64,000 nucleotides of DNA, taken from positions 186,001 through 250,000 of IMG/VR virus record IMGVR_UViG_3300027771_001853; one strand, written 5' to 3'. The translations under genes and the position numbers were made by a program. Position 1 is the first letter of the stretch. Each line of letters starts with the position of its first letter. This document shows, piece after piece, positions 7,501-50,702 of the stretch. Under the pieces are notes generated by a model that made no database searches, was not told the origin of the DNA, and was given only the letters and a program-made list of their open reading frames with translations.

Positions 7501-10500
7501 GCCCCATGTTTTGTTGACTGTCCCCAGAATGGAGGCTATATTAGGTATGTAGTCAGAAATTTCATTCCAACAAACCTCAAATAGGTGAGATACTGGAGCA
7601 GTGGATTTGGTGATGGTGGTGGTAGTGGTAAGGGTAGGAGATTGTGATAGTGACGATTCAAGGTTTTGGAACCTAGAAAATAACGGTACCACACCAACAT
7701 CAGTAGATATATTTAGTTTTTGTCCAAGGCATCTAGCTTCACCTGATTCGTATTTAACTTGGTCTACAATATCTAGAATTTCTATAGATTGGTGTCCATA
7801 GGCGTTATCCTGATACAAATTGATAAAGTCACCAATCTTAAGTGCGTTTACCGATGTTCCATCATTTCTAACAAAATTAGATAGGGGACCACCTCCTGAT
7901 GCTAATTGTTGTGTTGTGGTTGTGGTTGTTTGTCCAAATAAGGTAGTGGTTGTTGTTGTTGGTATAGCGTATGTTGTAGTAGTTGTTGTTGGTATAGCGT
8001 ATGTTGTAGTAGTTGTTGTTGGTATAGCGTATGTTGTAGTAGTTGTTAGTTGCCCAAATACTGTTGTTGTAGTTGTAATTGGGGGTATAGTGTATGTTGT
8101 AGTAGTTGTAGTTGGAGGTATAGCGTATGTTGTTGTAGTTGTAGTTGGCGGTATAGCGTATGTTGTTGTTGGTGTTGTAGTTGGGGGTGTAAATGCCTTT
8201 TTGTCTATATAAGTGCATGAAGTAGTATCACTTTTTGTAACATATTGGTCACCATCTTTTGTCCATACTTTAACTAAATAAGCTAGACCATTAACATTTA
8301 TATCTTCCCAACCTACCTTATTAACCCCCCCATTAGTAGGTTCGTAATATAGAACTGTTGGTGCGGTGGTAATTAGTTTAGTTTTTTCAGGTGAGGTTAT
8401 TTGACCGAAAATATCTCTAGTATCACCAATAAATTGTGGTACCTGTTGTAACATACTTAAACTTTGTAAATCTTCACACACACAACACTCATTATTAGTA
8501 CCTCCGGTTGATAGTCCGTTAACACCAAAATGCCACCAATTACCAACTGGGTAGTATGGGACCGCTGATGAAGATACTGTTCCCATATATTTTAAACATA
8601 GTACATCATTATTAAAACCATTTAAAGTGGAGTGTAGGGTAACTACTTGACCTACACCTGGACTACCAACCCAACTATAAAAGTAATTACCTCTAGTTAC
8701 CATATCATCTAACCCAACTGCTGTCATAAAGTCTATAAGTCCTGATGTTGTTCCCGGGGCGTCAATAGCTGATATGCCCACACCAGGTGGGAATGGTGAT
8801 GAAGTGGGTGATGGTAAAAAAGAAAATAGTTCACATTCCTCAAACACGTGAAAAGTACGTATCTCCGCTAATCCACCATCACAACTATAACAATCATTAT
8901 GTGTTGATAATACGGTAGCGGTACCAACAGGACAAATATCGTAATTAACGCTTAAAGGGCCCCATATTCTATTACCTACATAAGCAATCCAGTAGTCACA
9001 AAATATAGCCATCAATATACCGAAATTACTACAATTACCTAGGGCGAATATTGGGTCGTTAGGGTATGACCAAGTATAAACACCCAAATATTTAATGCAA
9101 TTTGTAAATGTTCCTAGTGCTATACCTGAATCTGGGCAGGCGACTGTCCACTCCATTTCTACAGTTATCACTTCTCCAGGGTTTGGGCTACCTAGATGAT
9201 TATAAAAATTTTGATTATTTAATGAATATTCTTGTACTGCGGCTAAGTCTTGACCAAGGTATGCACTATCAACGTACCCTGTCTGAGAATCAAGCCATAC
9301 TGGAGCAAATTTAGGGTACCCATTCAGTTGTGGTATAGAAGGGTCACCTGGACAATCCTCAAACATATGTAATGTAACATCCACATTTGCGTTTGCGTTT
9401 AATGGTATAGTTGGTAAGGGAGTGCTGTTTGGTAAAGGGTTTAGGTTAACATAGTCTCCCAAGGTCACAGTCGTCTTAGGTTTACTATAGTGGGTACCTT
9501 CCGGCATTATCGGTTGGTATGTCCTTGTATCAGCTGACGGACAACAACATCTTTCTACCCCATAAATTTGTCTAAAAGTGGTACTAGTTGTTGTTGTTGT
9601 TCTAAATATCTTGGTTGTAGTTGTGGTTGTTGGTGCACAATATGGGTCTTCACCATCTCCATTAGCCATACATTCAACACAGTTATCAATACCAAAAAGA
9701 CCTAGTGGGTTTAAGGTTATCCCATTGGGTGGAAGAGGGTTAGGTGTCACTATAACCTTATAACACGCCTTATGGTCTATGTCATTAAATGTCTCACCAA
9801 TAGCCAAACCACTAACTGAACCAGGGTTATCCACAATCCATTGTTCTGCTGTTGAACCAGTGATACAACACTCTTCTACTGTAATACCTGAAGTACATGC
9901 TGTATGAAAACATACTGTCGCTGATAATGTAGCTATACCAATATTATTAGCTTGTGTAGTCCCTAACCAATTAGATAGTAAGTATTCGTGACTATGTACT
10001 GATATAAAACCAAAATGTGTTAACCCACTTACACACCTACCATCAGGTGTTTTACCTGGACCGTAACCAGAATTCCAAAAACAAGCATCCGCACAATAAG
10101 GGTTTGTTTGTTTTATAGCATCAAAATTATATAGACCACCACCATTATTTGCGGCACCAATATCTACAAAGTCCACCGCGGGAACTACTCTACCTTCAAC
10201 AGCTCCATACGCATTTAATTGAGTAATCCTTTCCTGTTGGGTATCATTTACTGGTAATGTGTAAACAAAACTATTAAATGAACCATTATTACCTGGAGTA
10301 CCAGTAGGTTGGTCCCAAACACCATTATAGTATGTACCCATAAAAGAATCAAAATCTCTTAAGTAATTTTCTGTTGGTGTTATTTTCTGTAACCCAGATG
10401 TTACATTAATACTGTTGAGTTGGTTGGTATTCCAATCAGTACAGGGTACTGGTGGTGTTATAACACCAACGCCACTTGGAGCATTACATACCGGTAACCA

Positions 10501-13500
10501 TGGACTATCGTTATACCAAGGTTCAGTTTCATTGACAAAAGAAATAACCACAGCATTAGGGTCATTTAGAGCCGCGGCTATTGGCATATCAAGTCCAGAC
10601 CCACATACACCTTGTGGAACACTTATCCCAACTGGGGTTGGTATAAATGCATTTGTACCTTCCCATGGGTATCGTGAATACCTTAACCAAGATTCAGATT
10701 GTTGTTGTGGTGGTGGTACTGTAGCCTGATATAAACACCCAGTATAACCAGGTAATGTTTGAATAAATTGTTGCCACCAAGGTAGAACCACATTATTAGC
10801 TAATTGAGCTACACTAACAGCAAAACTACCACTCCCATCATAAAACACATAAAAATTAGTACCAGAAAATATACATGGACATTCACTAGGTGGTGTAGGT
10901 GGGCATTCACATTCACACGATACTAGAAGTGTGGTTGTGGTTGTTGTTGGTGGTGCGGGTGTAGTAGTTGTAGTTGTTGGTGGCCCAAGTGTTGTCGTAG
11001 ACGTGGTAGTAGATGGGGCACACGGGTCTGTAGTTGTTGTTGTCGATACAGGTACTGTAGTTGTTGTGGTTGTGGGACAAGGATTGTCCGGTGTCTCACA
11101 AAAACTACCAGCACATTCTAAACCAGCTAACGCTGTTACTCCAGATATACTACCTAATATAGTATTAGTTATAGGTCCTGAAGGTAATGTATATTTTGTT
11201 AAAACTAGGTTATCTGTCGCTCCAGAACAACACGTATTTTCTCCCCAACTAATTTCAATATCGTTACCATGACTGGAGCCTGGGGCGTAATCGGATAGGT
11301 CAATTGGACTACCAGCTGGTATTGGGTTTTTGAAAAAGAAACAGTATGTGTGTTCCATTAGTGGAGTTGGTGTAAGTGCTGGAGCACCAGCAATACAAGG
11401 TGCCGCCCCACCACGACACCTACCACCACCTGCACCAGCACTAATTGGTGGTGTCGCATCACAAATAGCAACAGGGAATCCAGGTCCTGTTGGGTACCTA
11501 ACTAATTCATATTTCCAACTTCCTATAATTGTACCAGAACCGTCAGGATGTCTAACCGTGAAGTTCCAATTATTAGTACTAGCGGTAAAATTATCCCCGT
11601 TAAAAACTTGACCTGATTGGGCTGAGTCATACATCAATACTTTCATATACTCTGCACCCATTACTTGGTCTTTGAATGTCCCCACCCCTGGTAGGTTACC
11701 GTTTGTACCTACATCAAATACCCCTTGTGTTACAATTTCTCCTGGTGTAGTCATACCCCCATCTTTCCATATCTCAGCATATTCTGGTTGACATGGTGTA
11801 CCCATTCCACCAAATTGTAAAGTTATTTCAAATTGAGATGGTTCACCTACCATTACACCTAAACCTATATTAGCTGGATTTTCAAGATATAAAATATTTG
11901 CACAATTCCCAGCAGGAGAATTAGGCCATTGGCCACATTGGGCTACACCTGCCTGATACCAATCTCTATTACCGGTACAATTTTGATGCTGAAGAGTACC
12001 TTCACCACAAGGTGAAGGTGTTGTAGGCATACATGATGGAACACCAGGAAAATTACCATCCATTACAATATTATAGTCCCATTGTCCTATGTTAGTGTTA
12101 GTAAATGGGTCGTATACCGTTAAAGTTAGTGGGTTGGTTGTGTCCCCAGTTAACATATCCATACTTACAAAATTCCCATCTTTGTCAAGTACGTTTAAAC
12201 TTAACTTAAGTGATTCAGCCCCTATTATTGGTCCAAACAATGGAGCAGCTCCTTGAATATTTCCGGGAGCACATGACCAAGGGGTGGGAATAGTAAAGGC
12301 ACATTGACCAGATATAATCAGACTTTCGTCAATCCACGTATGTTGGAACTGTTGTGGTGTACCCCCCGAACAACTAGGTAGTTGTCTTACAATGTAAAGG
12401 TCTTCACAATCATATAGTAAACCAGCGGAAATACTACTATTAAGTAATGGGTTTATAGTCCCAGGTATTGGATTGGCGTTTAATGTTGTACCATCAAAAA
12501 TACACACATAACCAGCTGATGAATTACAATTTCCTGGACCAAAAGAACATTCATCCAAATAAGTATAAAAATTGTTAGTTCCTGGTACGTTAGATAACCC
12601 ACTCATATGAGCATATGGGTTAGGTGGACTTGTAAATACGGTAAAATCACCCAAATAAGTTACACTACCATTAACCCATGGTTGTATCTGATATACCGGA
12701 TGAACAGTATTATTATAAGGAATAAAAATTAATTTATCATTTAAGCTATCATAACCTAAACAACCTTCACCTAACTCCTCAGTTCTTATACCACTTGTGT
12801 TATTACACACATCATAACCAGTATAAGTTTGAGCTAAAGACCCACTACCTGTGTTAGGGTTTACTTGGTATATGTGTAAGTCGTATCTAGATGTACCATT
12901 ACAAGTATCATCTATTTTATGTTCTAAAAATGCCCCATATAAAAAGTTATTTGTTGTTCTTTTAGCGAACCCTTGGAAGAACATATGTGGTATAGCTCCC
13001 CACATTGTTGGGTCTTTTAAAGCAATAGGTAACGTGGTTTGGGTGTGGGGTGAAGTTTTATGTATCGAATAAAAACCATTATTTCCTGTGGTTCCCGTAT
13101 TGATTATCTCCCAAGCTCCTGTAATTAAGCAACACTCATCACAACACGGTATCGTTGTCGTTGTTGTTGACGCGTAAGGGTCTGGTGTTGTCGTACTAGT
13201 AACGCAATCACCAGTAAGTGGTATAGTACCAAAATCACATGGGTCTGGTGTTGTAGTTGTTGTGGTTGGTGGTACCGTGGTTGTTGTTGTTGTTGGACAA
13301 TCACCAGTTAACGGGATTGTACCAAAATCACATGGGTCAAGTGTTGTTGTAGTTGTTGTTTGACCAGGTAACGTGGTTGTAGTTGTTGTTTGACCAGGTA
13401 ACGTGGTTGTAGTTGTTGTTTGGCCAGGTAATGTAGTTGTAGTTGTAAAACCTAAAATTGTTGTGGTGGTAGTAACACACTCACACTGACCATCAGTCAC

Positions 13501-15114
13501 CAAAAAGTCGTTCGCTAAAGGTGGGATGCCGTCATAGATAGTTGTTAATGTACTCCCAGTACCAACTAATAGATAATTGTTTGCTCCAATATCCCTAATA
13601 AGGCTCCACCAGTTATTAGATATCGGTAGTGACCCCCAAGGGTTTTGTTTTATTAATATACCGTGTGTTAATATACTATTAGAAGGGTTACTAATGTGGT
13701 TATATATGTACGGTGAAGTCACATCATTACAATAAGAACCTTCTAACATATCACCAGGATACGTTACACCAGATAATACACCTTGGAAATACTCTACAGG
13801 GTAAATACACACACATTCTGTAGTGGTGGTTGTGGTTGTTGGTTCTGGTGGGATATAAGTCGTTGTTGTTGTGGTAGAAGGGCATTCAGCTGTAATATAC
13901 TCAGTATACGAACAACCGTCTGGTGCTAACACTTCCACACAATACGTTTTACAACATTCTAAAGTCAAATCAAAACAAGTGGTACTTGCTGTACACCAAC
14001 CAAAATGTGGAGCTGTACATCCTGACACGTACATTATTTGGCAATTGGTACAATCTGAATCACATAAAGATATTGTAGAGTTTGTAAAATCTGGAGAAAC
14101 ATCTATACTATACTCTTCTGTACAAAGTGTTGTGGTAGTTGTAACAACAGGTTCTATAATCTCAAACCCAAACATTTTATGATTGTAATTAGGTACGTAT
14201 GTTGTTTGTGTTGACGCTGTTTGGGGTACCACCTCCCAGTTATAGGTTTGTGGGTCTATTTTAGCTAACCCATTGTAGGATAGAAAGTAAAATTTATCAT
14301 CATACTCATCGTAGGTTAAGTCACCAACCCACGCTCTTCCACCAAATGGTATATTACGACCCGCTTGGTTATTAATAACATATGAAACATGTGCTGAACA
14401 ATAACTTAATACTGTGTTAACCCCATTGTTTGTGTTTATGTGTTGGAATGTTAGACCACTTGTCATCCCACTGATATAGCCTACCGCGTATAACTCACTC
14501 TGTCTATACGCTAAACCAAGACCACTATTTAAAAAACAGGTAGTCCCAGAATAAAATGGTTGTTGTGGTGTTGCATTTGGATGACTAACACTCCAAGTGT
14601 GTAAATATAAATCACCAACAGCTGGGTAAACCCATGAACCCATACCACCCATTGTCATATCAACCCCTTGCATGTTTGTACACCTTAATAAGGTAAAACA
14701 ATCGTTTGCTTCATCATAAGCAAATCCACCAACTAAAGGTTGCCACCCATGGTTATCGTAAGGTAATGTTAATGTAAGCCCCGAATATATTGTTTTGGTC
14801 CTACCTCCCCAGTCTTGGTCTGTTTTGAAGATTTGTCCTGGTAATTGCCAAGAACTTATGGAACCATTTTCACCAGCGAACCCATAAAGTTTTTTATTCT
14901 TTTGGGTCATTCCATAGTATGGGTCCATATTAAAAAATGGACCAGAGTACGAAGATTCTGGAGATTCTGTGATACCCGCTTCGTTCCTAGGTATTAATGG
15001 TGGTGGTGAACCTACGGGGGCTAAATTCCACTCATATAAATCATACTTCCATATGTTAGGTCCAGAAATTGAACCTTGTTGTATAGTATAAGCGGAGAAA
15101 TTTGGTGAAGGCAT
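1576..15114 (-). CDS. Giant 4512-aa modular Cys-rich/poly-Thr protein, putative virion fibre or adhesin with two DUF1566-like lectin domains and a vWA-like segment
   Basis: Single long ORF; dozens of T5-T7 linkers; GGxVF...DW[FY]xP...RPVR motifs; YDGSGS motif; located among structural genes. Confidence 0.8.
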   Translation of the reverse strand: MPSPNFSAYTIQQGSISGPNIWKYDLYEWNLAPVGSPPPLIPRNEAGITESPESSYSGPFFNMDPYYGMTQKNKKLYGFAGENGSISSWQLPGQIFKTDQDWGGRTKTIYSGLTLTLPYDNHGWQPLVGGFAYDEANDCFTLLRCTNMQGVDMTMGGMGSWVYPAVGDLYLHTWSVSHPNATPQQPFYSGTTCFLNSGLGLAYRQSELYAVGYISGMTSGLTFQHINTNNGVNTVLSYCSAHVSYVINNQAGRNIPFGGRAWVGDLTYDEYDDKFYFLSYNGLAKIDPQTYNWEVVPQTASTQTTYVPNYNHKMFGFEIIEPVVTTTTTLCTEEYSIDVSPDFTNSTISLCDSDCTNCQIMYVSGCTAPHFGWCTASTTCFDLTLECCKTYCVEVLAPDGCSYTEYITAECPSTTTTTTYIPPEPTTTTTTTECVCIYPVEYFQGVLSGVTYPGDMLEGSYCNDVTSPYIYNHISNPSNSILTHGILIKQNPWGSLPISNNWWSLIRDIGANNYLLVGTGSTLTTIYDGIPPLANDFLVTDGQCECVTTTTTILGFTTTTTLPGQTTTTTTLPGQTTTTTTLPGQTTTTTTLDPCDFGTIPLTGDCPTTTTTTVPPTTTTTTPDPCDFGTIPLTGDCVTSTTTPDPYASTTTTTIPCCDECCLITGAWEIINTGTTGNNGFYSIHKTSPHTQTTLPIALKDPTMWGAIPHMFFQGFAKRTTNNFLYGAFLEHKIDDTCNGTSRYDLHIYQVNPNTGSGSLAQTYTGYDVCNNTSGIRTEELGEGCLGYDSLNDKLIFIPYNNTVHPVYQIQPWVNGSVTYLGDFTVFTSPPNPYAHMSGLSNVPGTNNFYTYLDECSFGPGNCNSSAGYVCIFDGTTLNANPIPGTINPLLNSSISAGLLYDCEDLYIVRQLPSCSGGTPQQFQHTWIDESLIISGQCAFTIPTPWSCAPGNIQGAAPLFGPIIGAESLKLSLNVLDKDGNFVSMDMLTGDTTNPLTLTVYDPFTNTNIGQWDYNIVMDGNFPGVPSCMPTTPSPCGEGTLQHQNCTGNRDWYQAGVAQCGQWPNSPAGNCANILYLENPANIGLGVMVGEPSQFEITLQFGGMGTPCQPEYAEIWKDGGMTTPGEIVTQGVFDVGTNGNLPGVGTFKDQVMGAEYMKVLMYDSAQSGQVFNGDNFTASTNNWNFTVRHPDGSGTIIGSWKYELVRYPTGPGFPVAICDATPPISAGAGGGRCRGGAAPCIAGAPALTPTPLMEHTYCFFFKNPIPAGSPIDLSDYAPGSSHGNDIEISWGENTCCSGATDNLVLTKYTLPSGPITNTILGSISGVTALAGLECAGSFCETPDNPCPTTTTTTVPVSTTTTTDPCAPSTTTSTTTLGPPTTTTTTPAPPTTTTTTLLVSCECECPPTPPSECPCIFSGTNFYVFYDGSGSFAVSVAQLANNVVLPWWQQFIQTLPGYTGCLYQATVPPPQQQSESWLRYSRYPWEGTNAFIPTPVGISVPQGVCGSGLDMPIAAALNDPNAVVISFVNETEPWYNDSPWLPVCNAPSGVGVITPPVPCTDWNTNQLNSINVTSGLQKITPTENYLRDFDSFMGTYYNGVWDQPTGTPGNNGSFNSFVYTLPVNDTQQERITQLNAYGAVEGRVVPAVDFVDIGAANNGGGLYNFDAIKQTNPYCADACFWNSGYGPGKTPDGRCVSGLTHFGFISVHSHEYLLSNWLGTTQANNIGIATLSATVCFHTACTSGITVEECCITGSTAEQWIVDNPGSVSGLAIGETFNDIDHKACYKVIVTPNPLPPNGITLNPLGLFGIDNCVECMANGDGEDPYCAPTTTTTTKIFRTTTTTSTTFRQIYGVERCCCPSADTRTYQPIMPEGTHYSKPKTTVTLGDYVNLNPLPNSTPLPTIPLNANANVDVTLHMFEDCPGDPSIPQLNGYPKFAPVWLDSQTGYVDSAYLGQDLAAVQEYSLNNQNFYNHLGSPNPGEVITVEMEWTVACPDSGIALGTFTNCIKYLGVYTWSYPNDPIFALGNCSNFGILMAIFCDYWIAYVGNRIWGPLSVNYDICPVGTATVLSTHNDCYSCDGGLAEIRTFHVFEECELFSFLPSPTSSPFPPGVGISAIDAPGTTSGLIDFMTAVGLDDMVTRGNYFYSWVGSPGVGQVVTLHSTLNGFNNDVLCLKYMGTVSSSAVPYYPVGNWWHFGVNGLSTGGTNNECCVCEDLQSLSMLQQVPQFIGDTRDIFGQITSPEKTKLITTAPTVLYYEPTNGGVNKVGWEDINVNGLAYLVKVWTKDGDQYVTKSDTTSCTYIDKKAFTPPTTTPTTTYAIPPTTTTTTYAIPPTTTTTTYTIPPITTTTTVFGQLTTTTTYAIPTTTTTTYAIPTTTTTTYAIPTTTTTTLFGQTTTTTTQQLASGGGPLSNFVRNDGTSVNALKIGDFINLYQDNAYGHQSIEILDIVDQVKYESGEARCLGQKLNISTDVGVVPLFSRFQNLESSLSQSPTLTTTTTITKSTAPVSHLFEVCWNEISDYIPNIASILGTVNKTWGIEYFGTPNYIGDACYDGVTNTSTVPSVDYLANNLDFYQYLGSPSVGETVRWCYWNDNITYTNGPSGLGPSRIPGMTCTCLRYMGQGTPDFYSNLVCTVTNSTNGTTCSDCDTNPNSGWGGSLTNKGITWDDTTTNMGLNSCCCNDDYPNGANCMPERINDTGCSGFTYTDLSAIPIGGTWYDATSGECFTHIADPGLTYFDFTAPVPNPGGPYIDCDACEQINEIICEPVTTTTTRPSEIWGLKPCCCEDDVIIGVVPNVGDVGQAGGFVFHVDTINNIIYEVAPKSTEIGGFGMRWGCWGTPVLPSPTLGTSIGMGKINTNEIIAAGCPDPTPWATYLDTLIYNGYDDWFAPSYNEWLKLWFNIGPGQALLSPLYNLADLDDLKPFSGSTDQPPIWITSSEHPANPVYDTIAIGLPTTWGTTMQVLQKNFLFMWLRPVRSYNYATCSGYTTTDLSTVPIGNTWFDPLSGQCYERIAYPGPTNYNVNVPLNGPYDDCECCEITHKIVDDCVTTTTTIWDPPKTTTTTTNRPTTTTTTRPHICYGIKPCCCLTGQTYSIGDTGPAGGVVFYHDGQGNYLEASPYDVNLSNYDLPQNIIAANATDSAHTFTMWGCMNLYVSGTSREIFAGSDNTSKINNACTPDIYGYPCCPSCTTDVNWARTNPCSGNTVPFTYDCKDKKADAGGGYLDCTKEYIGNSVWPNPGSNLDASNITLHSAAHICSTFSFSGYTDWYLPTIKEMNEMYNGLVGSTGGQTIGLENPLAAGPPNETFYSTYNFAEGGYYWTSSECDASRAEYFPMFNGFNNIHLSLGMSNGPNYPTGTPCSGRDSIFPELFSSELHSKSLIPYPDINNNIIQGSPKYIRPVRKFTTTNETCSGCTKTDLSFMPIGQVFYDVGTNMCYERIEIPGPDLYNISVVPSIFYQDCFSIGGCLDTHHIVCTTTTVPPTTTTTTAWSATTTTSTVPPTTTTTTCQGLSACCKTNNIVFARWCGDLTNPASGLTSYNAFYDTLTNECWETIGREQGPIISINYPPIPLYSCAACEIPCTTTTTTVCLPFALSACCEEYVFSLTADCNTILSYPNDQTDILVGQGLLGTINGVPGCYVVVPSEPSAPVVPAGFTYQFWCTNSVAAGDPPCICSGCTETNFSWSVPCPSTTTTTTKRCADCFCLSGVSHLEIFYTGTSTSVEDDVCLTSADGTYCLDEIQGGSAPDYIYVNQNNAPGIGHYQIVPFQYVNIPPLEIASWVVQWCDNINCVGGNNPYQIATASTIVNTSIPASNPAWDLGQTVWEYIDNQIGPISVNPRNVDKQDPCYNYSGTSHTGCCTTYGLLTCCYDPTNPYWGENLCCNKNQVYYNTVYDIPSLVSGTTGNPSIVPIDTIHTPCPNMCLTIVDEAIHTYEPVVGAPMLTLNNIDDVWTTDYPYACMICREMYQPCSCPTTTTTTVPPTTTTTTGPVTTTTTSSGPLGLENCCDPTLQFVAAGTLYTILAGMNLGDAFYSTIMPSDYTGCWKIINNPVGIIQTNMFAPSFVSSSCAELNTNTNYTLCCPVTTTTTIPVSTTTTTPSPTLGVRQCCPPYDEYIATGVILTWLNSNLILGDVVYGNIITAPFSLQEGCWEFVSNVSGPGVAVSITPVNIYSSLVYQDPCNICVLDEEAPCTTTTTIGGTIGVESCCMDPVTGAFDQYVALGAFEVYLNGLIVGQAFSTQLVDTTGLIIRGCFKVINNPIGLSVSTFTTPGIVYSDCYTLDQALPLGCCAPLPTTTTTTTQEVQYVKHCCTGDVYELVGDPGAVSGVAGLNNDDTFRLVVSGGQFDGMACCFHKCVGCAPIVGTISGTFLFPIWPAGLTDQCDTCEDKGQSVGCCPTTTTTTVNVTGRGLEECCSDTNGVFQQYVAIGTLLTDINGLSLGSSHLFIISGVPVCARIINSPTGPTVTGAVLLSPPAPTPCAGLQAWLPYQNQDPTLRIPCCPVTTTTTCTPI
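7952..8170 (-). repeat. Intragenic 30-bp tandem repeat encoding YAIPTTTTTT
   Basis: Three perfect copies of gttgttgttggtatagcgtatgttgtagta at 7952-8041, then degenerate copies. Confidence 0.9.
13205..13446 (-). repeat. Intragenic repeats: 3 x LPGQTTTTTT (30 bp) and 2 x PCDFGTIPLTGDC
   Basis: 13351-13380 identical to 13381-13410; third copy near-identical; duplicated peptide visible in the translation. Confidence 0.9.
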
Positions 15115-15131: not shown

Positions 15132-15974
15132 TTATGAACATGCTCCTGAGTAGGTCACACCGTTAGTTATTCCACTATACACAGATATATAAGTTCCTAC
15201 CAGAGTGGCACCGGTAAGTAGTCTAACTGGGGTAAATGTAGTACCAGAAGTACTGGAAGCATAGACTTCCCAACCATAAACACCCGTAGTTAAAAGAGAG
15301 TATTTCAAATGACTATCCCAATAATTTTCTTTTGTTAACCCGGAGGACGAGTAACTAGAAAAAGGGTAACTATACTCAAGAGTGAATCCTGTTGAGATTA
15401 CGTGGTCCCTGAAAGTCCCAGCTGTAGTTGTAACACCACTTAGACAAACGGACTGTAAACAGTACGCTGTATTAGATTCACAAGCTGTGTTATAAGCTAT
15501 CGAATCAGTAAATTTAAAGAAAGGACCTGTATTATCTGTAGTAGCTGAAACCACTTGTACCGTACCAAACATATCCGTTTTATAATATTTTCCATTTGTT
15601 AACCCAGGAGCGTTTACAGCTCTACCAATTAGATTTGTATTTCCTGATGTACTTTGTGGGGATATAACTCCTTGTACCATAACATTGTATGGGTTATAGG
15701 TGCACCCGGTCCCACCAAAAATTGTAGTGGCGGTTAAACAACAAGTACCACTGAAACAATCACAGTTTTCACACTCTGGATGTGGTACGGAAATAGTCTT
15801 TATGCAGTAGTCTTCACCACAAGGAATACACATTGGAAAACATACATTTCCAAATACGTCACCAGGACCTGTCTGTCCCGAATAAACGCAATTAGTACAA
15901 CCAGATTGGCACAAATATACATCATAAGGTGCACTACTTCCGGTTATATAAAAATTGATACAATTTTGAGCCAT
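15132..15974 (-). CDS. Cys-rich putative virion structural protein, very rich in [S/T]GxT
   Basis: 280 aa; N-terminal YDVYLCxxxCxNC module resembles one in the giant ORF; TATTTATA upstream. Confidence 0.7.
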   Translation of the reverse strand: MAQNCINFYITGSSAPYDVYLCQSGCTNCVYSGQTGPGDVFGNVCFPMCIPCGEDYCIKTISVPHPECENCDCFSGTCCLTATTIFGGTGCTYNPYNVMVQGVISPQSTSGNTNLIGRAVNAPGLTNGKYYKTDMFGTVQVVSATTDNTGPFFKFTDSIAYNTACESNTAYCLQSVCLSGVTTTAGTFRDHVISTGFTLEYSYPFSSYSSSGLTKENYWDSHLKYSLLTTGVYGWEVYASSTSGTTFTPVRLLTGATLVGTYISVYSGITNGVTYSGACS

Positions 15975-16035: not shown

Positions 16036-17235
16036 TTATTGATTACAAGTTGCACAATTGATAAACTGGTTAGATAATGTATTACCATCAATAATCCTCA
16101 AGGTAGATACATCTGGTACACACGGTTCCACTGTTGTTCTATAACACCCACTATATGTTAGCGAGCCATTAGGGTCATATGTACCATTAGTTAACCCAGA
16201 GAAACTATAATACCCACCATCTACTAATAGTGGTGACGCACATGGTCGTATCAAAGATAGAAACCAAGCGTTCGCATTACAATCAGATATACCATAACAA
16301 ACGGGTGGGTTACAAGTTGTTGTAGTTGTTGTTGGTACTGGTATTGTGGTAGTTGTGGTTGTTGGTGCCGTGTATGTTGTTGTCGTTGTTGTTGGTTCTG
16401 GTATTGTGGTAGTGCTTGTGGTAGTTTCACATGGTTCGTCATCAATTATCGGTGGGCAACATAAACATTCTGGTTCTGAAACAAAAACAGTGTATGATGT
16501 TTTTATAAATCCACCACAGTCTTGGTTTGTTTTTTGTATACTAGTACTAAAAGTGTAGATTCCTGTTCCGTAATTGTAGTCATTTTCTATTTTACTCTTA
16601 ATCCAATCAGGTATGTTAGTATTGGGTGACCAAGTAAACCCACTAGACTCCCAACAAGTACCAGCACTAAAGTGACCAGTATATATGTCAGTAACCTCAC
16701 TAAGACTACATTCACAATTATCAGCATTTAATAATTGTGTATCCGGAGATAATTCCCAATAATAAGGGTAACCACAACCAGACCAACAGATTTCTACCTT
16801 ATCTGCGTTTCTTTTTAAAGAATTGGTCCAACCGTTATCCATCCCCGTTAACCCTATATCACAGATGGATGTGATAAATCCACCCATTTCTGTACACCCA
16901 GAGGTATAACAATCAACCCCACAATCTATACAATCCAAATCTTTTGCTGATGGTGTTGCGTGACACCAACATGTACCACTTATACTCAATATTGTATTGT
17001 TAGGGTAAAATGTACCACATTCCATAGTCAATTGCAATGAAGAGGACGGGTTACCTAAGTCTATCCAGACGGGTAAAACCTCACAATCATCGTAACCAAT
17101 GATATTTTTAGAGTATAAAACTTCCGTGTTAATATCCCTTTCATCAGCTACTAAGAAAAAATCATAGTAGGATGTGTAGTCTAATTTAGCGTCTAATCTA
17201 TTAAAATAATAATTCTTTAAATTCTGTGGTCCCAT
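16036..17235 (-). CDS. Cys-rich putative virion structural protein with poly-Thr linkers
   Basis: 399 aa; T-tracts; many Cys; TATTTAT upstream. Confidence 0.7.
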   Translation of the reverse strand: MGPQNLKNYYFNRLDAKLDYTSYYDFFLVADERDINTEVLYSKNIIGYDDCEVLPVWIDLGNPSSSLQLTMECGTFYPNNTILSISGTCWCHATPSAKDLDCIDCGVDCYTSGCTEMGGFITSICDIGLTGMDNGWTNSLKRNADKVEICWSGCGYPYYWELSPDTQLLNADNCECSLSEVTDIYTGHFSAGTCWESSGFTWSPNTNIPDWIKSKIENDYNYGTGIYTFSTSIQKTNQDCGGFIKTSYTVFVSEPECLCCPPIIDDEPCETTTSTTTIPEPTTTTTTYTAPTTTTTTIPVPTTTTTTCNPPVCYGISDCNANAWFLSLIRPCASPLLVDGGYYSFSGLTNGTYDPNGSLTYSGCYRTTVEPCVPDVSTLRIIDGNTLSNQFINCATCNQ

Positions 17236-20633: not shown

Positions 20634-22148
20634 TTAAGAAGGTGGGTTACCAAAATAATTAGCCTGACTAACAACTTGGAAATTTATTGCCTCCCGGTAA
20701 CTGTTAACCTCTAGATTGGAAGTGGCTTTTAAGTCTATAAAATACTCATTAGGTATCATATCCCCAGTGTCGATAATAAAGTAGTTTTGGTTGTATGCAC
20801 GACTAACTTTACTCCATGGGTGTGTTTCTACTTGTTGTGTACCTTGTTTAACAAATACCCTATACTCTAAATCAGACACATCCACATTAACATTAACCGT
20901 ATATGGTTTTCTTGCTGATACTATAATTTTTCTAACATCACCACCTACTATTTTTTCAGCCTTTTTTAAACCACTAAAAGAATAACCATAAGTTTTAGGT
21001 TCACCCACATTGGTCCCTATATTAAAATACTCACTATTGGATTTTAATGTGAACTTGTTGGTTACTTTATCTTTACACACACCATTTATTTCTACGTTTG
21101 ACCATTGGTCTCTAAATAAACAAGGTGTGGTGTAGGTATCACAATCTATACTAAAACAAGTACAGTAAACACCTTTAGTAACTTTGGATATATTGGTGGA
21201 TGTTAGTGCTGAAACAATATTATTACTATTGTCGTATATGGTAACACTAGGCAAAGAGTCTAAATCTACTGGGTGACCACCGGCATTCACATACAAGTAT
21301 AAACAATTAGTCTTTCCTTCATAAAAATTCGCTCTAGAGTCTTCTATAGTATCATCATAATTACTTTCTAGATAAGGTTCATAAAATGTTTGTGTGTATT
21401 TTGTGTAAAACCCTACCGAATAACTTTCTGTTAACCCTGTCATATTTTCATACCTAGCAAAAAACGAAATACCGTACCCACAATCATCAGGAGTACCACC
21501 ACTTAATATGTTATTAATTTCTGCTGACATATCAAACACAATATTCTCATTACCGTTATCGAAATGTTGTGTATCTATAATAGAAACAGCTGGTGCTCCA
21601 CCGTTATTATAAATTCCTGGATATAACCACGACTGTAAGGTGGTAGCTTTAAAATAGTTACTTGGTCTTTCTGAATAACTTTTGTCCGTTTTCATCGCTT
21701 GGAAATCCCATGAAGATTTGTAGTCGTACCCTACACCCTCGTCCCAACATGCTGTAGTCGCTGAAACATGAACATTATCCACTATTTTAAATAATAAAAG
21801 GTCAAAAGAAGTTGCTCTCATACGTGCAGAGGCATTTTCAGTATTTAAAAGTTCTGTATCAAAAAACGAAGTATTCACCATTCTTAGAGTATGTGTGGTA
21901 GCCGAATTGCCACATCCACCCGCTACAACTATAGTACCATCAGCGTATTTACGTTTTAAATCCTGTAAATCCAAATCAAATATAAATCTTGAAAACTTAG
22001 ATGATGTACTTGTGGTACCCCCAGAAGAGTTTATTGAAGTATACCCACCACCATAATATAATTCAGTGACTGGATTTTTAGCAGTGTTTACCTCACTACC
22101 TTTTACTATTGTATTATTTTTACTAAAATATGATTTATGTAGAGCCAT
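20634..22148 (-). CDS. Putative virion structural protein (DNRLRE-like N-terminal region)
   Basis: KNNTI...NT...EL...SRFIFDLDL...WDEGVGYDY pattern; TATTTATA upstream; next to baseplate gene. Confidence 0.5.
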   Translation of the reverse strand: MALHKSYFSKNNTIVKGSEVNTAKNPVTELYYGGGYTSINSSGGTTSTSSKFSRFIFDLDLQDLKRKYADGTIVVAGGCGNSATTHTLRMVNTSFFDTELLNTENASARMRATSFDLLLFKIVDNVHVSATTACWDEGVGYDYKSSWDFQAMKTDKSYSERPSNYFKATTLQSWLYPGIYNNGGAPAVSIIDTQHFDNGNENIVFDMSAEINNILSGGTPDDCGYGISFFARYENMTGLTESYSVGFYTKYTQTFYEPYLESNYDDTIEDSRANFYEGKTNCLYLYVNAGGHPVDLDSLPSVTIYDNSNNIVSALTSTNISKVTKGVYCTCFSIDCDTYTTPCLFRDQWSNVEINGVCKDKVTNKFTLKSNSEYFNIGTNVGEPKTYGYSFSGLKKAEKIVGGDVRKIIVSARKPYTVNVNVDVSDLEYRVFVKQGTQQVETHPWSKVSRAYNQNYFIIDTGDMIPNEYFIDLKATSNLEVNSYREAINFQVVSQANYFGNPPS

Positions 22149-22172: not shown

Positions 22173-23846
22173 TTAGTTGATTCTAATATTCTGATTTAAT
22201 ATTTCTGTCCTCGCAGTATTTAAAGCCTCATCAATGTCACTTAGTGTTACATTACCTTCTTTAGGTTTATCAAATGGGGTCCCTTGGGGGAAATGATGAC
22301 AGTGACCTCTCATCCAGTCTCGCATCATTTCTAGAAGTAATACTAGTTGTTCTCCCCTTACTAAAGGTTCCATGTACTTGTCCTGGGTCTGTATTAGTGT
22401 TTTTTGGTCTATACCTGTTTTGTATGGTGATTGGTCGTAATTTGTTTTTGATTCTTTTGTCGGATTGTTATCACCTTTACTAGCAATTTTAGATGGGTAC
22501 GCGAATAATAATATTTTATCACTTAATAATGTCGCAACACCTTGTTCTTTATCGGGGTCGTCTTTTGCTTCTTCTAATTCAGTCTTTTTGATTTTTTCTA
22601 CAGGTGATGGACTTAATTGTGAAAATACCAAGCCAAAACTATCATCTACACCTACCACCCCTTTAATTTGTGACTCTATTTGGACGGCTATTTTATTCCC
22701 AGTGGCTACAGCCTCTTGGAACCCTATTGTTGGTCTATAGTAAAAAGGCCATAAGTTACGTATGTCAGTACTCCCTGCTGGTGATTCAGTACCTGTACTT
22801 ATTGGGCTATAGTTAAGGAAATTTTTTGACCACCCACCACTAACTGATGGTACTGAATCCAAAAATCCGTTTCCGGCTGGACCACTACCATTCGCTTCAT
22901 TTATAAATTTATCTATTAAATACGTTACCCCACTCATTGGTTGTGGTCCGAACGATAATTCTACTAATGGTTTTGTGTCCCAAGAACTTAAAATGTTTGT
23001 AGTTTTACCAATATCTTTACTTGATAAGGCTCTTGGTATCTCTATCTCACCATTAGCTGTTACTTCCCATAATTTAACATTCCCGTAAAAACCACCTACT
23101 TGACTAAGGTCGTCTATATCATACTCTATTAAATAATTAACTTCACCTACCTCCACTTCCGGTTCCTCATGTACCGTTTTCTCCATTTCTTTAGCTGTAA
23201 TAAAACTAGACAGTTGGAGCATGGTAACGTCATCGTTTTTTGTTGGGAACCATGGTGATTGTGTATTTGGTTTGAACTTACCTGCCCTAATAACCACCTC
23301 CCTAGAACCCAATATAATATCTGAATTATCTTTTCCGTCTATGGAAACGGTATTGGGGTTAGCAAAAGTACCATTTGATTTTTCGTTATTAGTTATAGCT
23401 TCACTTCCTTTATCTCTAGTTCCTTTAGAATACCCCTTTCTACCAGAACCATAATGTTCACCTAAAGCATCTGTACCACCTAAATGGTGTGGTTGTGAAA
23501 TAGTTGAACCTACGTATACCCTATTCTGTTCTTTGTTGGAGTCTTGGTAAAACATAATAGGTACGTTGTCACTGACACTCGGTGAAACGTTTATATGTAT
23601 GGGTAGTAGTGGTTGTGTAAGAAAAGGGTCATCTTTAGACCAATACATAGCTTCCACGCTAGAGTAACCCTTATCACTATAAGAAGTTTCGTAAGTAGAG
23701 TCAACGTAATTCTGTGGTGTTTCACTTTTATATTCAAAATCAGCTACTAGTCTAATTCTCCCCGCTCTTATAGGGTCATTATTGTCTATACACACACCGA
23801 AGTATATGTTATTCTGTGGGTTAATTTTTTGCACTCCTTTAGCCAT
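22173..23846 (-). CDS. Baseplate hub/spike protein (gp5/VgrG-like OB fold)
   Basis: N-terminal GVCIDNNDPIRAGRIR; C-terminal PLVRGE...HCH apex motif. Confidence 0.7.
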   Translation of the reverse strand: MAKGVQKINPQNNIYFGVCIDNNDPIRAGRIRLVADFEYKSETPQNYVDSTYETSYSDKGYSSVEAMYWSKDDPFLTQPLLPIHINVSPSVSDNVPIMFYQDSNKEQNRVYVGSTISQPHHLGGTDALGEHYGSGRKGYSKGTRDKGSEAITNNEKSNGTFANPNTVSIDGKDNSDIILGSREVVIRAGKFKPNTQSPWFPTKNDDVTMLQLSSFITAKEMEKTVHEEPEVEVGEVNYLIEYDIDDLSQVGGFYGNVKLWEVTANGEIEIPRALSSKDIGKTTNILSSWDTKPLVELSFGPQPMSGVTYLIDKFINEANGSGPAGNGFLDSVPSVSGGWSKNFLNYSPISTGTESPAGSTDIRNLWPFYYRPTIGFQEAVATGNKIAVQIESQIKGVVGVDDSFGLVFSQLSPSPVEKIKKTELEEAKDDPDKEQGVATLLSDKILLFAYPSKIASKGDNNPTKESKTNYDQSPYKTGIDQKTLIQTQDKYMEPLVRGEQLVLLLEMMRDWMRGHCHHFPQGTPFDKPKEGNVTLSDIDEALNTARTEILNQNIRIN

Positions 23847-33601: not shown

Positions 33602-33603
33602 CT

Positions 33604-35617: not shown

Positions 35618-35619
35618 AA

Positions 35620-37181: not shown

Positions 37182-37183
37182 AT

Positions 37184-37753: not shown

Positions 37754-37759
37754 ATTTTA

Positions 37760-38176: not shown

Positions 38177-38192
38177 TTTTATATTTTCAATT

Positions 38193-39687: not shown

Positions 39688-39691
39688 ATTT

Positions 39692-39722
39692 AAAATGTAT
39701 TAAAATATTTTAATAAAGTCAC
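39692..39722 (-). promoter_or_regulatory. Putative Bacteroidota-type -33/-7 promoter (weak)
   Basis: GTG-N20-TACATTTT upstream of the 39687 start. Confidence 0.35.
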
Positions 39723-41059: not shown

Positions 41060-41062
41060 ATC

Positions 41063-41734: not shown

Positions 41735-41735
41735 A

Positions 41736-44740: not shown

Positions 44741-44741
44741 A

Positions 44742-50643: not shown

Positions 50644-50660
50644 ATTTCTTTTATTTGAAC

Positions 50661-50691
50661 AAAAAGTAATGAAAATAATTGGTATGTCAAA
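50661..50691 (-). promoter_or_regulatory. Putative Bacteroidota-type -33/-7 promoter at the start of the glycan island
   Basis: TTTG-N19-TACTTTTT upstream of 50643. Confidence 0.5.
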
Positions 50692-50702
50692 CTTGTGGGC
50701 AT

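What the first reader, a model, noticed from the sequence alone, without database searches (positions are those of the whole stretch)
15132..15974. Recurrent [S/T]-G-x-T motif in exposed structural proteins: a possible glycosylation sequon
Seen: the 280-aa protein has 10 copies (SGCT, SGQT, TGCT, SGNT, SGVT, TGFT, SGLT, SGTT, TGAT, SGIT) among 16 S/T-G dipeptides. About 25 copies were counted by eye in the 4512-aa protein. More occur in the 399-aa and 504-aa proteins, in gp5 (SGVT) and in the MCP insertion (TGGT, TGST x2), with SATT/SAYT variants. The motif looks rare in the enzymes and terminase. It appears in unrelated sequence contexts, so it is not a simple repeat unit, and it differs from the Bacteroidota D-[S/T]-x sequon. 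Inference: a recognition tag for phage GTs or another modifying enzyme.
Basis: partly seen in the sequence, partly recalled or inferred. Interest (0 to 1): 0.8.

Follow-up and report, generated by a model that had tools for sequence, protein, structure and literature searches.

The report
Selected [ST]-G-x-T surface-loop motif
A four-residue motif, Ser/Thr-Gly-any-Thr, is far too frequent, too order-specific and too well conserved in the outer virion proteins of this aquatic jumbo T4-like phage family to be chance. It sits in loops and is missing from the one related clade that lacks the phage's sugar-gene island, so it is a credible but unproven candidate tag for phage-encoded protein glycosylation.

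Summary

- **Enrichment.** The 280-aa ORF has 10 [ST]G.T against about 1 expected (0 of 20,000 shuffles). The 4512-aa ORF has 27 against about 11. Five other putative virion ORFs pooled have 12 against 3.6. The 47 non-structural ORFs have 3 against 4.5.
- **Specificity.** Position 0 accepts only S/T (not N/D), position 1 G or, less often, A, and position 3 only T (not S/V/I). Reversed and permuted orders sit at about 1x. Codons vary, so the signal is at protein level.
- **Selection.** Across orthologues, S/T, G and T vary in 3-10% of columns, x in 41%, and flanks in 23-46%.
- **Not fold-dictated.** 69 DUF1566 homologues from outside this lineage show no enrichment.
- **Relatives.** Across about 70 relatives the 504-aa family carries 323 motifs against 43 expected, mostly in predicted loops.
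- **Sugar island.** The three lineages of the one clade without a sugar/GT island carry none.

The best reading is a recognition tag for a phage-encoded modification, most plausibly O-glycosylation (about 0.45). The main rival is a lineage-specific loop or turn motif (about 0.3). No glycan has been shown, and the island association rests on one evolutionary event.

The parts
15132..15974 (-). 280-aa Cys-, Thr-, Ser- and Gly-rich ORF with ten [ST]G.T motifs. Motif coordinates: 15894-15905, 15870-15881, 15699-15710, 15636-15647, 15429-15440, 15381-15392, 15333-15344, 15237-15248, 15204-15215, 15165-15176.
   Evidence: 10 against 1.0 expected, 0/20,000 shuffles. It is a real gene: 77 synonymous against 32-42 nonsynonymous codon differences to orthologues. 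It is otherwise an ORFan, with relatives only at 85-89% identity. The AF2 single-sequence model is unusable, pLDDT 34.
1576..15114 (-). 4512-aa giant ORF made of Cys-bounded modules joined by about 45 poly-Thr linkers. It carries 27 [ST]G.T motifs.
   Evidence: 27 against 11-12 by shuffling. With poly-Thr masked, SG.T scores 20 against 2.6. Across orthologues of 68-71% identity, motif positions vary in 5/60 columns against 327/788 for other S/T/G (p = 6e-8). Lcl_C/DUF1566 domains were confirmed.
16036..17235 (-). 399-aa ORF with poly-Thr linkers and 3 [ST]G.T motifs.
   Evidence: 3 against 0.9. Two of the three are invariant in orthologues. Poly-Thr similarity to the giant ORF.
20634..22148 (-). 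504-aa putative virion protein with Ig-like beta-sandwich domains. It has 3 [ST]G.T (aa 42, 216, 237) and 3 SA.T (aa 82, 129, 313). Across relatives this is the most motif-rich family.
   Evidence: Family of 69 island-bearing sequences: 323 against 42.7. Four island-less sequences: 0 against 1.3. AF2 pLDDT 75.8, pTM 0.78. Foldseek hits are tandem Ig-like domains. Motif residues are 83% coil.
22173..23846 (-).
   Evidence: Family over relatives: 55 against 21.2. No family or PDB match.
24056..25975 (-). 639-aa ORF with TGPT and TGLT.
   Evidence: 2 against 0.4 in the window. The family over relatives scores only 22 against 17.9, so the case here is weak.
50753..52591 (-). T4 Gp23-type major capsid protein. 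Its three motifs all lie in the variable insertion (aa 181, 195, 261).
   Evidence: Pfam Gp23, E = 7e-72. Across 73 relatives the insertion (ref aa 111-360) scores 147 against 42, with local shuffles giving 45.7 +/- 6.7. The conserved core scores 3 against 11.9.
30693..47729 (-). Sugar-nucleotide and glycosyltransferase island. It encodes two GDP-mannose 4,6-dehydratases, epimerases, DegT aminotransferases, a methyltransferase, sulfotransferases, GT2s, a GT11 fucosyltransferase, a NodZ/FUT8-like protein and an Asn-synthase-like amidotransferase.
   Evidence: Pfam hits. In relatives the dUTPase-PhoH interval is hypervariable, holding 0 to more than 12 genes of differing content.
49411..50808 (-). 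465-aa glycosyltransferase next to the MCP gene. Homologues occur in island-bearing and island-less relatives wherever the fetched locus reached that position.
   Evidence: PHROG 7162 glycosyltransferase, E = 9e-39. Homologues of 43-58% identity in relatives, including the island-less clade.

Best explanation
[ST]-[G>A]-x-T is a short surface-loop motif under selection in the outer virion proteins of this family of aquatic T4-like jumbo phages. Those proteins are the giant fibre-like protein, its 280-aa and 399-aa neighbours, the 504-aa Ig-like protein and the MCP insertion domain.

It most likely acts as a recognition tag (sequon) for a phage-encoded post-translational modification made in the host cytoplasm. 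The most plausible modification is O-glycosylation of the Ser/Thr at position 0 or the Thr at position +3, using enzymes and sugars from the hypervariable sugar/GT island.

**Shown:**
- the enrichment
- the order and residue specificity
- purifying selection on the three defined positions with x free
- loop location in one modelled family
- independence from fold
- absence from the island-less clade

**Inferred:**
- that the motif is modified at all
- that the modification is a glycan
- which residue is the acceptor
- which enzyme reads the motif
For: 1. **Enrichment beyond composition.** The 280-aa ORF scores 10 against 1.0, the 4512-aa ORF 27 against 11, and five other virion ORFs 12 against 3.6. 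Non-structural ORFs score 3 against 4.5.
2. **Residue specificity.** Position 0 takes S (33 against 4.4) and T (16 against 5.3), but not the better turn formers N (4 against 4.0) or D (5 against 3.3). Position 1 takes G (49 against 9.7) and A (17 against 5.2). Position 3 takes T (49 against 9.7), but not S (8 against 8.1), V or I.
3. **Order specificity.** The reverse and six other permutations sit near 1x in most comparisons across four protein families, up to about 2.5x for a few. The only strongly enriched one, TG.[ST], overlaps TG.T itself.
4. **Protein-level signal.** Both Ser codon families and all Gly codons are used.
5. **Selection.** The variability profile is S/T 0.10, G 0.03, x 0.41, T 0.10, with flanks at 0.23-0.46. 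In the giant protein, motif positions vary in 5/60 columns against 327/788 for other S/T/G (p = 6e-8). Substitutions are conservative (S<->T, G->A, T->S). One loss is paired with one gain in the P0008/P0009 variants.
6. **Not fold-dictated.**
   - 69 DUF1566 homologues from elsewhere score 24 against 27.6.
   - At the turn before DWxLP they read [NG]-G-[YKF]-[DSN], with 0 of 107 copies matching [ST]G.T, where the phage has SGYT.
   - T4 structural proteins score about 18 against 13.5.
7. **Patchy but retained sites in the 504-aa family.** There are 26 distinct alignment columns, 10 of them in at least 5 sequences, against 8-14 and 0-2 for permuted-order control motifs (up to 4 for [ST]G.[VI]). 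This resembles sequon turnover in viral glycoproteins.
8. **Location.** 83% of motif residues map to coil, against 51% coil overall, in the AF2 model (pLDDT 75.8). In the MCP, 147 of 150 fall in the variable insertion.
9. **Island association.**
   - The island-less clade (three lineages 69-72% identical to each other) has 0 motifs in its 504-aa homologues.
   - At equivalent positions it reads N-T-L-E, S-D-L-E or D-G-D-K.
   - All ORFs in its loci score 10 against 16.4.
   - The 69 island-bearing homologues score 323 against 42.7.
10. **Island content.** Pfam detected nucleotide-sugar enzymes and many soluble-type GTs, but no flippase, polymerase or oligosaccharyltransferase. Several island ORFs have no family assignment. 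That pattern fits direct cytoplasmic glycosylation of a substrate.
11. **Poly-Thr linkers.** The same proteins carry mucin-like poly-Thr linkers.
Against: - There is no direct evidence of any modification.
- The island/motif association is one evolutionary event: the island-less clade is the outgroup on a long branch.
- No island gene family is common to all motif-bearing lineages. A conserved sequon would need a conserved reader.
- The only universally conserved GT (49411-50808) also occurs in the motif-less clade.
- Clades with 7-9-gene islands have only one motif in the 504-aa homologue (L109, L111, L115, L174, L175, L181).
- Some conserved instances lie in proteins unlikely to be targets. 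Examples are the PhoH Walker-A SGKT, a TGLT in the sigma-like 232-aa ORF, and the 189-aa ORF family (34 against 4.0).
- Solvent exposure was not measured. Only secondary structure was available, and only for one family.
- The fibre-module ORFs of the island-less clade are not homologous to the window's, so they are not a like-for-like control.
- Only 20-30 kb of the island-less contigs was seen, so other GT genes may exist there.
- The island could instead serve host-surface or DNA modification.
Confidence: 0.45

Rival explanations
1. A purely structural loop motif. The Ser/Thr side chain caps a tight turn, Gly or Ala allows the backbone kink, and Thr starts or caps the following beta-strand. 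This phage lineage reuses it in loops it has added to beta-rich virion proteins. No modification is involved.
For: - Sites sit in loops, typically just before a strand.
- Hydrophobic or Cys residues are over-represented at -1, -2 and x.
- In the 504-aa family x is conserved per site (L/M, V, C), and it stays hydrophobic in the motif-less outgroup (NTLE, SDLE).
- Gly is the most conserved position (0.03), as expected for a turn.
- In the C-terminal half of the 280-aa ORF, spacing is 11-16 aa, like successive hairpins.
- Conserved instances occur in non-virion proteins.
Against: - N and D, the usual residues before Gly in tight turns, are not enriched at position 0. V, I and S are not enriched at position 3.
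- Homologous folds outside the lineage (DUF1566) and the outgroup 504-aa homologues build the same turns without the motif.
- T4 fibre and Ig-like Hoc proteins show no comparable enrichment.
- The motif recurs in unrelated predicted folds: a beta-propeller-like N-terminus, DUF1566, small Cys domains, Ig-like domains and the MCP insertion.
- The internal head protein, protease and terminase families lack it.
Confidence: 0.3
2. A functional surface motif that is not modified. Examples would be a hydroxyl-rich contact for host polysaccharide binding or adhesion, or for contacts between virion proteins during assembly.
For: The motif is confined to outer virion proteins and exposed variable loops. 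The giant protein carries lectin-like DUF1566 domains and adhesin-like architecture.
Against: A four-residue motif scattered over many unrelated domains, with x free, is not how binding sites usually look. Sites are gained and lost patchily among close relatives. This reading does not explain the absence from the island-less clade.
Confidence: 0.1
3. A tag for a different post-translational modification of Ser/Thr, such as phosphorylation, acylation or cross-linking, rather than glycosylation.
For: The statistical and evolutionary evidence is the same as for the sequon reading. Cys is common near the motif.
Against: No kinase, acyltransferase or dehydratase was detected in the 64-kb window, whereas about 17 kb encodes sugar enzymes. 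The island association points to sugars.
Confidence: 0.1
4. An artefact of composition, low complexity, repeats or reader selection.
For: The proteins are S/T/G-rich. The giant protein has poly-Thr tracts and a repeated small domain that contributes 3-5 sites. Pooled family counts are inflated by shared ancestry.
Against: Global and local shuffles, poly-Thr masking, permuted-order controls, an exhaustive scan of a-b-x-c patterns and orthologue conservation all reject it.
Confidence: 0.03

Closest known systems
Mycobacteriophage virion glycosylation by phage-encoded glycosyltransferases (Freeman et al. 2023, Cell Host Microbe; known to me and cited in PMC12619734; the paper itself could not be read here)
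   Same: A tailed phage carries its own GT genes, and the proposed targets are exposed virion proteins including the capsid protein.
   Different: In that system glycans are reported at the C-termini of capsid and tail-tube subunits, with no [ST]-G-x-T sequon. The hosts are Actinobacteria and the phages are siphoviruses. Here nothing has been shown biochemically, and the motif is scattered through loops of fibre-like, Ig-like and MCP-insertion domains.
Chlorovirus and giant-virus capsid glycosylation with virus-encoded cytoplasmic machinery and non-canonical sequons (reviewed in PMC9614988 and PMC7019647; sequon details from my own knowledge)
   Same: Virus-encoded sugar-nucleotide synthesis plus many soluble GTs. 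The target is the major capsid protein and fibres. The sequon is not that of the host.
   Different: Those glycans are N-linked to Asn in eukaryotic algal or amoebal viruses. Here the candidate acceptor is Ser/Thr in a bacteriophage.
N-x-[ST] N-glycosylation sequon
   Same: The logic is the same: a short tag with a free x and a downstream hydroxyl residue (Thr preferred), patchily gained and lost on exposed loops of viral surface proteins.
   Different: The acceptor and residues differ. N.[ST] itself is not enriched here (62 against 75).
Bacteroidota general O-glycosylation motif D-[ST]-[AILVMT]
   Same: An O-linked three-residue sequon used in the phylum to which the probable hosts belong. 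The closest cultured MCP relative infects Flavobacterium.
   Different: It is not enriched in these proteins (25 against 23.7). That system acts in the periplasm on exported proteins, whereas phage virions assemble in the cytoplasm.
Proteoglycan xylosylation site Ser-Gly-x-Gly
   Same: A Ser-Gly core, and sulfotransferase genes in the island.
   Different: Position +3 is Thr, not Gly ([ST]G.G scores 14 against 9.8). That is a eukaryotic Golgi pathway. The resemblance is probably superficial.
ST-turn and Gly-containing beta-turn or beta-bulge motifs
   Same: S/T followed by Gly in loops preceding beta-strands.
   Different: Generic turn motifs also favour N/D at position 0 and do not need Thr at +3. 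Neither preference is seen here.

Membership tests
Protein glycosylation sequon (generic) | Short position-specific motif over-represented in target proteins relative to composition and to non-target proteins | tested here: met
   10 against 1.0, 27 against 11 and 12 against 3.6 in virion ORFs. Non-structural ORFs score 3 against 4.5. Permuted orders sit at about 1x.
Protein glycosylation sequon (generic) | Sites lie on solvent-exposed surface of the folded target | tested here: inconclusive
   83% of motif residues are coil in the AF2 model of the 504-aa ORF (pLDDT 75.8). MCP sites lie in the variable insertion. Outgroup equivalents are polar or charged. No coordinates or accessibility values were available, and the 280-aa model failed.
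Protein glycosylation sequon (generic) | Co-occurrence of motif with the cognate transferase across lineages | tested here: inconclusive
   The island-less clade has 0 motifs and island-bearing lineages have 1-9. However, this is one phylogenetic event, there is no universal island gene, and the universal GT is also in the motif-less clade.
Protein glycosylation sequon (generic) | Covalent glycan on the motif's Ser/Thr | not testable with these tools
   This needs glycoproteomics of virions or co-expressed proteins.
Bacteroidota O-glycosylation D-[ST]-[AILVMT] | Enrichment of the D-[ST]-[AILVMT] tripeptide in the target proteins | tested here: not met
   25 against 23.7 in structural ORFs and 37 against 36.9 in non-structural ORFs.
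N-linked sequon N-x-[ST] | Enrichment of N-x-[ST] | tested here: not met
   62 against 75.3.
Glycosaminoglycan attachment site S-G-x-G | Gly at +3 | tested here: not met
   [ST]G.G scores 14 against 9.8, whereas [ST]G.T scores 49 against 9.7.
Tandem or domain repeat unit | Motif copies embedded in mutually alignable repeat units | tested here: not met
   There is no internal similarity in the 280-aa ORF. Only 3-5 of 27 sites in the giant ORF belong to a repeated small domain.
Fold-determined structural motif | Homologues of the same fold in other lineages carry the motif at equivalent positions | tested here: not met
   DUF1566 homologues: 0 of 107 copies at the equivalent turn, and 24 against 27.6 overall. 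The outgroup 504-aa homologues have none.
Generic beta-turn (type I + G1 bulge or ST/Asx-turn) | N/D as well as S/T favoured before Gly, with no specific requirement at +3 | tested here: not met
   N scores 4 against 4.0 and D scores 5 against 3.3 at position 0. Only T is enriched at +3.

The most novel reading that the evidence does not exclude
A large, widespread family of aquatic T4-like jumbo phages (more than 500 IMG/VR contigs) decorates its capsid, Ig-like tail or baseplate protein and giant fibre with O-glycans at a previously undescribed sequon, [ST]-[GA]-x-T. The glycan structure would be set by a hypervariable, O-antigen-like sugar island. That would make virion glycan diversity, with the sequon number tuned per protein, a major axis of phage evolution in the ocean and in lakes.
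Probability: 0.3. Interest if true: 0.9.

Novelty: new variant of a known kind. Interest (0 to 1): 0.72.

Why it matters
Virion glycosylation by phage-encoded enzymes is so far documented mainly in mycobacteriophages, and without a defined sequon. If this motif is a sequon, three things follow.

- It would give the first sequence rule for predicting glycosylated phage proteins.
- It would explain why a 17-kb hypervariable sugar island sits in the structural region of an abundant aquatic phage family.
- It would make the question directly testable: co-express one small protein with the island GTs and look for mass shifts on ten predictable peptides.

If the motif is instead structural, it is still an unusually specific loop signature, and a useful marker of exposed loops in otherwise unannotatable virion proteins.

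Tried and rejected
- **DNA-level signal: rejected.** Codons at the motif vary freely.
- **Composition, poly-Thr and local composition artefacts: rejected**.
- **Internal repeats in the 280-aa ORF:** none found.
- **General property of phage fibres: rejected** using T4 gp34-gp37, gp12, Hoc and others.
- **Distant homologues of the 280-aa ORF:** none in the phage database, the 5.8-billion-protein collection or the 1.8-billion representative set beyond 83-89% relatives.
- **Distant homologues of the giant protein N-terminus:** only orthologues of 60-64% identity.
- **AF2 of the 280-aa ORF alone:** pLDDT 34, unusable.
- **ESM Atlas:** only weak leads, to beta-sandwich or CBM-like families for the 280-aa ORF and beta-propeller families for the giant N-terminus.
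- **PDB sequence searches** of the giant, 557-aa and 639-aa ORFs: nothing meaningful.
- **NCBIfam on GTs and virion ORFs:** nothing.
- **Conservation test within the 280-aa cluster alone:** underpowered, 3/30 against 60/250, p = 0.1.
none found.
- **Correlation of motif number with island size within island-bearing lineages:** no evident relationship in the per-locus table (no statistic computed).
- **Literature:** nothing found for an SGxT sequon. The Freeman 2023 paper was not held.
Full report
**What the window is.** The 64-kb window comes from a distant T4-like phage.
- It encodes a Gp23-type major capsid protein (50753-52591, Pfam E = 7e-72), a portal, a large terminase and a prohead protease, and PhoH.
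- The closest cultured MCP relative is Flavobacterium phage immuto, at 36% identity.
- The window is 100% identical to IMG/VR contig IMGVR_UViG_3300027771_001853, which is 297,623 bp. Close relatives occur in Tara Oceans and other aquatic assemblies of 260-300 kb.
- More than 500 IMG/VR contigs encode MCPs at 62-74% identity, so this is a large family of aquatic jumbo phages.
- Between dUTPase (47734-48348) and PhoH (29919-30668) lies a 17-kb island. It encodes two GDP-mannose 4,6-dehydratases, epimerases, DegT aminotransferases, a methyltransferase, sulfotransferases and at least six glycosyltransferases.
- One further GT (49411-50808, PHROG 7162) sits beside the MCP gene.

**The observation.**
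- The 280-aa ORF has 16 [ST]G dipeptides, ten of which are [ST]G.T.
- Whole-protein shuffles give 1.02 +/- 0.99, and none of 20,000 reaches ten.
- The 4512-aa ORF has 27 against 12.1 +/- 3.4 (0/3,000).
- Shuffling within 20- or 40-residue blocks, which keeps local composition, changes nothing: 1.1 and 11.
- Five other putative virion ORFs (399, 504, 557, 639 aa and the MCP) pooled score 12 against 3.5-3.7 (at most 1/2,000). The 47 remaining ORFs pooled score 3 against 4.5, and one of those is the PhoH Walker-A SGKT.
- In an exhaustive scan of all a-b-x-c patterns, SG.T ranks first in the 280-aa ORF (7 against 0.44). In the giant ORF it ranks second, after the poly-Thr pattern TT.T (20 against 3.9).
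- BLAST finds no internal repeat in the 280-aa ORF. In the giant ORF only three to five sites belong to a repeated small Cys-bounded domain beginning C-SG-x-T-x-TDLS.
- Both serine codon families and all glycine codons are used, so the signal is at protein level, not DNA level.

**How specific the motif is.** With poly-Thr tracts masked and the seven virion ORFs pooled, enrichment breaks down as follows.

| Position | Enriched | Not enriched |
|---|---|---|
| 0 | S 33 against 4.4; T 16 against 5.3 | N 4 against 4.0; D 5 against 3.3 |
| 1 | G 49 against 9.7; A 17 against 5.2 | all others |
| 3 | T 49 against 9.7 | S 8 against 8.1; V; I; G |

- The sub-patterns are not individually enriched. [^ST]G.T and [ST]G.[^ST] are at or below expectation, so the three positions act together.
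- The reversed motif and six other permutations of the same residues sit near 1x in most comparisons across four families (up to about 2.5x for a few; the 280-aa cluster, giant protein, 504-aa family and MCP family). The only strongly enriched one, TG.[ST], overlaps TG.T itself.
- The Bacteroidota sequon D[ST][AILVMT] (25 against 23.7) and N.[ST] (62 against 75) are not enriched.

**Selection.** The 280-aa gene is real: it shows 77 synonymous-only against 32-42 nonsynonymous codon differences to three orthologues.
- Orthologous loci were fetched from three other lineages. The first 3,330 residues of the giant protein are 68-71% identical among them.
- Motif-defined positions vary in 5 of 60 columns, against 327 of 788 for all other S/T/G residues (p = 6e-8).
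- The positional profile pooled over five protein families is sharp: S/T 0.10, G 0.03, x 0.41, T 0.10, with flanks at 0.23-0.46.
- Changes at defined positions are conservative: S<->T at position 0, G->A, and T->S.
- Within the 280-aa cluster the test alone is underpowered. Two variants (P0008, P0009) have lost one site (SGLT->SAVT) and gained another (TGVY->SGVT).

**Is it dictated by fold?** Three controls say no.
1. T4 baseplate, fibre, capsid and Hoc proteins show no comparable effect: about 18 against 13.5 overall, gp34 0 against 2.0, and gp37 6 against 2.1.
2. The giant protein contains Lcl_C/DUF1566 domains.
   - The 69 homologues recovered from other organisms have 24 motifs against 27.6 expected.
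   - At the conserved turn before DWxLP they read [NG]-G-[YKF]-[DSN], with none of 107 copies matching [ST]G.T. One phage copy reads SGYT and its paralogue reads the family-typical NGYD.
3. The outgroup of the 504-aa family builds the same protein without a single motif (see below).

**The wider family.** Loci around the MCP (80 loci) and around the 354-aa ORF (24 loci by sequence and 70 more by profile) gave the following obs/exp ratios.

| Family | Obs/exp |
|---|---|
| 504-aa | 8.1x |
| MCP | 3.5x |
| 557-aa | 2.6x |
| 639-aa | 2.2x |
| 493-aa head protein | 2 against 11.5 |
| Prohead protease | 0 against 4.0 |
| Terminase | 1 against 4.0 |
| Portal | 10 against 7.1 |

- Pooled counts are inflated by shared ancestry. 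Single conserved sites also produce apparent enrichment in the 189-aa, 232-aa and 290-aa families, so per-protein counts matter more.
- The 504-aa homologues carry 1-9 sites each, against 0.4-0.9 expected. These sit at 26 distinct alignment columns, ten of them occupied in at least five sequences. Permuted-order control motifs occupy 8-14 columns, with 0-2 columns at that depth, and up to 4 for [ST]G.[VI].
- In the MCP, 147 of 150 occurrences fall in the poorly conserved insertion (ref aa 111-360). There the score is 147 against 42, with local shuffles giving 45.7 +/- 6.7. The conserved Gp23 core scores 3 against 11.9. The number of distinct columns in the MCP is no higher than for control motifs, so that case rests on a few retained sites.

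**Structure.** AF2 on the 280-aa ORF alone failed (pLDDT 34).
- With a 39-sequence alignment, the 504-aa ORF gave a usable model (pLDDT 75.8, pTM 0.78).
- Its Foldseek matches are tandem Ig-like or macroglobulin-like beta-sandwiches.
- Mapping every [ST][GA].T occurrence in the family onto the model puts 83% of motif residues in coil, where coil is 51% of the protein. They typically lie in the loop just before a strand.
- Several motif-bearing loops are deleted in the outgroup. Where the loop is kept, the outgroup reads N-T-L-E, S-D-L-E or D-G-D-K. The hydrophobic x is retained and the flanking positions become polar or charged, which argues that those positions are exposed.
- Only secondary structure was available, so accessibility was not measured.

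**The GT-less relatives test.**
- In relatives the interval between dUTPase and PhoH is hypervariable. It holds from 0 to more than 12 genes with largely different content, resembling an O-antigen locus.
- One clade (L101/L102, L103, L125/L126) has dUTPase directly next to PhoH. Its four distinct 504-aa homologues, 69-72% identical to one another, have no motif (expected 1.3).
- All ORFs of its loci pooled score 10 against 16.4. Its positional counterparts of the fibre genes are at chance even though they too carry poly-Thr linkers.
- All 69 island-bearing homologues have at least one motif: 323 against 42.7.

The caveats are serious.
- The island-less clade is the outgroup on a long branch, so this is a single evolutionary event.
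- Only 20-30 kb of those contigs was seen.
- Within island-bearing lineages motif number shows no evident relation to island size, and one clade with 7-9 island genes has only one site.
- No island gene family is universal.
- The one universal GT (49411-50808) is also present in the motif-less clade.

**Interpretation.** The motif is real, ordered, residue-specific and under purifying selection with a free x. It is located in loops of outer virion proteins, is not imposed by fold, and is absent where the sugar island is absent.

These are the properties expected of a sequon, and they recall how N-x-[ST] sites behave on viral surface proteins. Pfam detected nucleotide-sugar enzymes and many soluble-type GTs in the island, but no flippase, polymerase or oligosaccharyltransferase, although several island ORFs have no family assignment. 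That pattern suits direct cytoplasmic glycosylation, as in chloroviruses, mimiviruses and mycobacteriophages.

I therefore put a modification tag, most plausibly for O-glycosylation, first at about 0.45. The main rival, at about 0.3, is a lineage-specific structural loop motif. Its support is the loop-to-strand position, the highly conserved Gly, the hydrophobic residues at -1, -2 and x, and conserved instances in non-virion proteins. Against it are the lack of N/D at position 0, the strict Thr at +3, and the absence of the motif from homologous folds elsewhere. Unmodified binding motifs and other modifications share the remainder. A chance or composition artefact is excluded.

Which residue would be the acceptor, and which enzyme reads the motif, cannot be decided here.

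**Novelty and significance.** No paper describing an SGxT-type sequon was found. Phage-encoded virion glycosylation is known from mycobacteriophages (cited in PMC12619734). If confirmed, this would therefore be a new variant of a known kind: a defined O-sequon in an abundant aquatic T4-like jumbo phage family, coupled to a hypervariable glycan locus. The 280-aa protein, with ten predictable sites, is an ideal test substrate.

Noticed in passing
window 1576-15114 (-): The 4512-aa ORF is built from about 25 Cys-bounded modules joined by about 45 poly-Thr (T4-T7, often P/T-flanked) linkers. The N-terminal 324 aa have beta-propeller-like features (Atlas lead). Two to three modules are Lcl_C/DUF1566 domains, each followed by a 75-aa Cys domain. 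Five ~95-aa repeats lie at the C-terminus. CC dipeptides are enriched (31 against 10). The architecture resembles a mucin-like adhesin.
   Followed up: partly
window 29919-48348, and L100-L195 upstream of the PhoH homologue: The interval between dUTPase and PhoH is a hypervariable sugar/GT island across the phage family. It holds 0 to more than 12 genes with mosaic content and no universal gene, resembling O-antigen or capsule loci.
   Followed up: yes
window 20634-29029 versus L018-L097: In most relatives the block from the 354-aa to the 504-aa gene lies immediately downstream of the MCP on the opposite strand (convergent). In the window lineage it is co-oriented with the MCP and separated from it by the island. 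A large inversion or rearrangement distinguishes this lineage.
   Followed up: partly
window 52620-54101 (-) and its homologues in L018-L097: The 493-aa head-module protein family next to the MCP has almost no [ST]G.T (2 against 11.5 over 66 sequences). The protease scores 0 against 4.0 and the terminase 1 against 4.0. This could be avoidance in non-target proteins or simply shared ancestry.
   Followed up: no
window 15723-15920 (aa 19-84 of the 280-aa ORF) and aa 348-417 of the giant ORF: The Cys-rich N-terminal third of the 280-aa ORF (18 Cys in total) is weakly similar to an 84-aa Cys-rich module of the giant protein (32% over 75 aa, E = 3e-5). The two neighbours therefore share a domain type.
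   Followed up: partly
window 16036-17235 (-), L001, L012, L016: The orthologue of the 399-aa ORF varies from 399 to 619 aa between close relatives, through extra sequence around its poly-Thr linker region.
   Followed up: no
P0008/P0009 (280-aa cluster), aa 211-214 and 229-232: Two variants lost one motif (SGLT->SAVT) and gained another 18 residues downstream (TGVY->SGVT), keeping the total at ten.
   Followed up: partly
window 51581-51592 (MCP aa 334-337 region) and mcp alignment column 455: A TG[ASTM]T site present in 60 of 73 MCP relatives is absent from the window's own MCP (VGAN) and from the island-less L103 (EPST).
   Followed up: no
window 36594-37217 (-): This 207-aa ORF matches only the middle of DegT aminotransferases and overlaps the start of the next gene. 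Homologues of 195-211 aa are kept in several relatives' islands, so it is a conserved short protein rather than a fresh fragment.
   Followed up: no
L122 11046-13019 (+), L101 1134-1802 (-): Proteins with many poly-Thr linkers (11 runs in 658 aa) also occur in the island-less clade. Poly-Thr linkers therefore do not depend on the sugar island. The conserved 465-aa GT homologue there itself contains a poly-Thr run.
   Followed up: no
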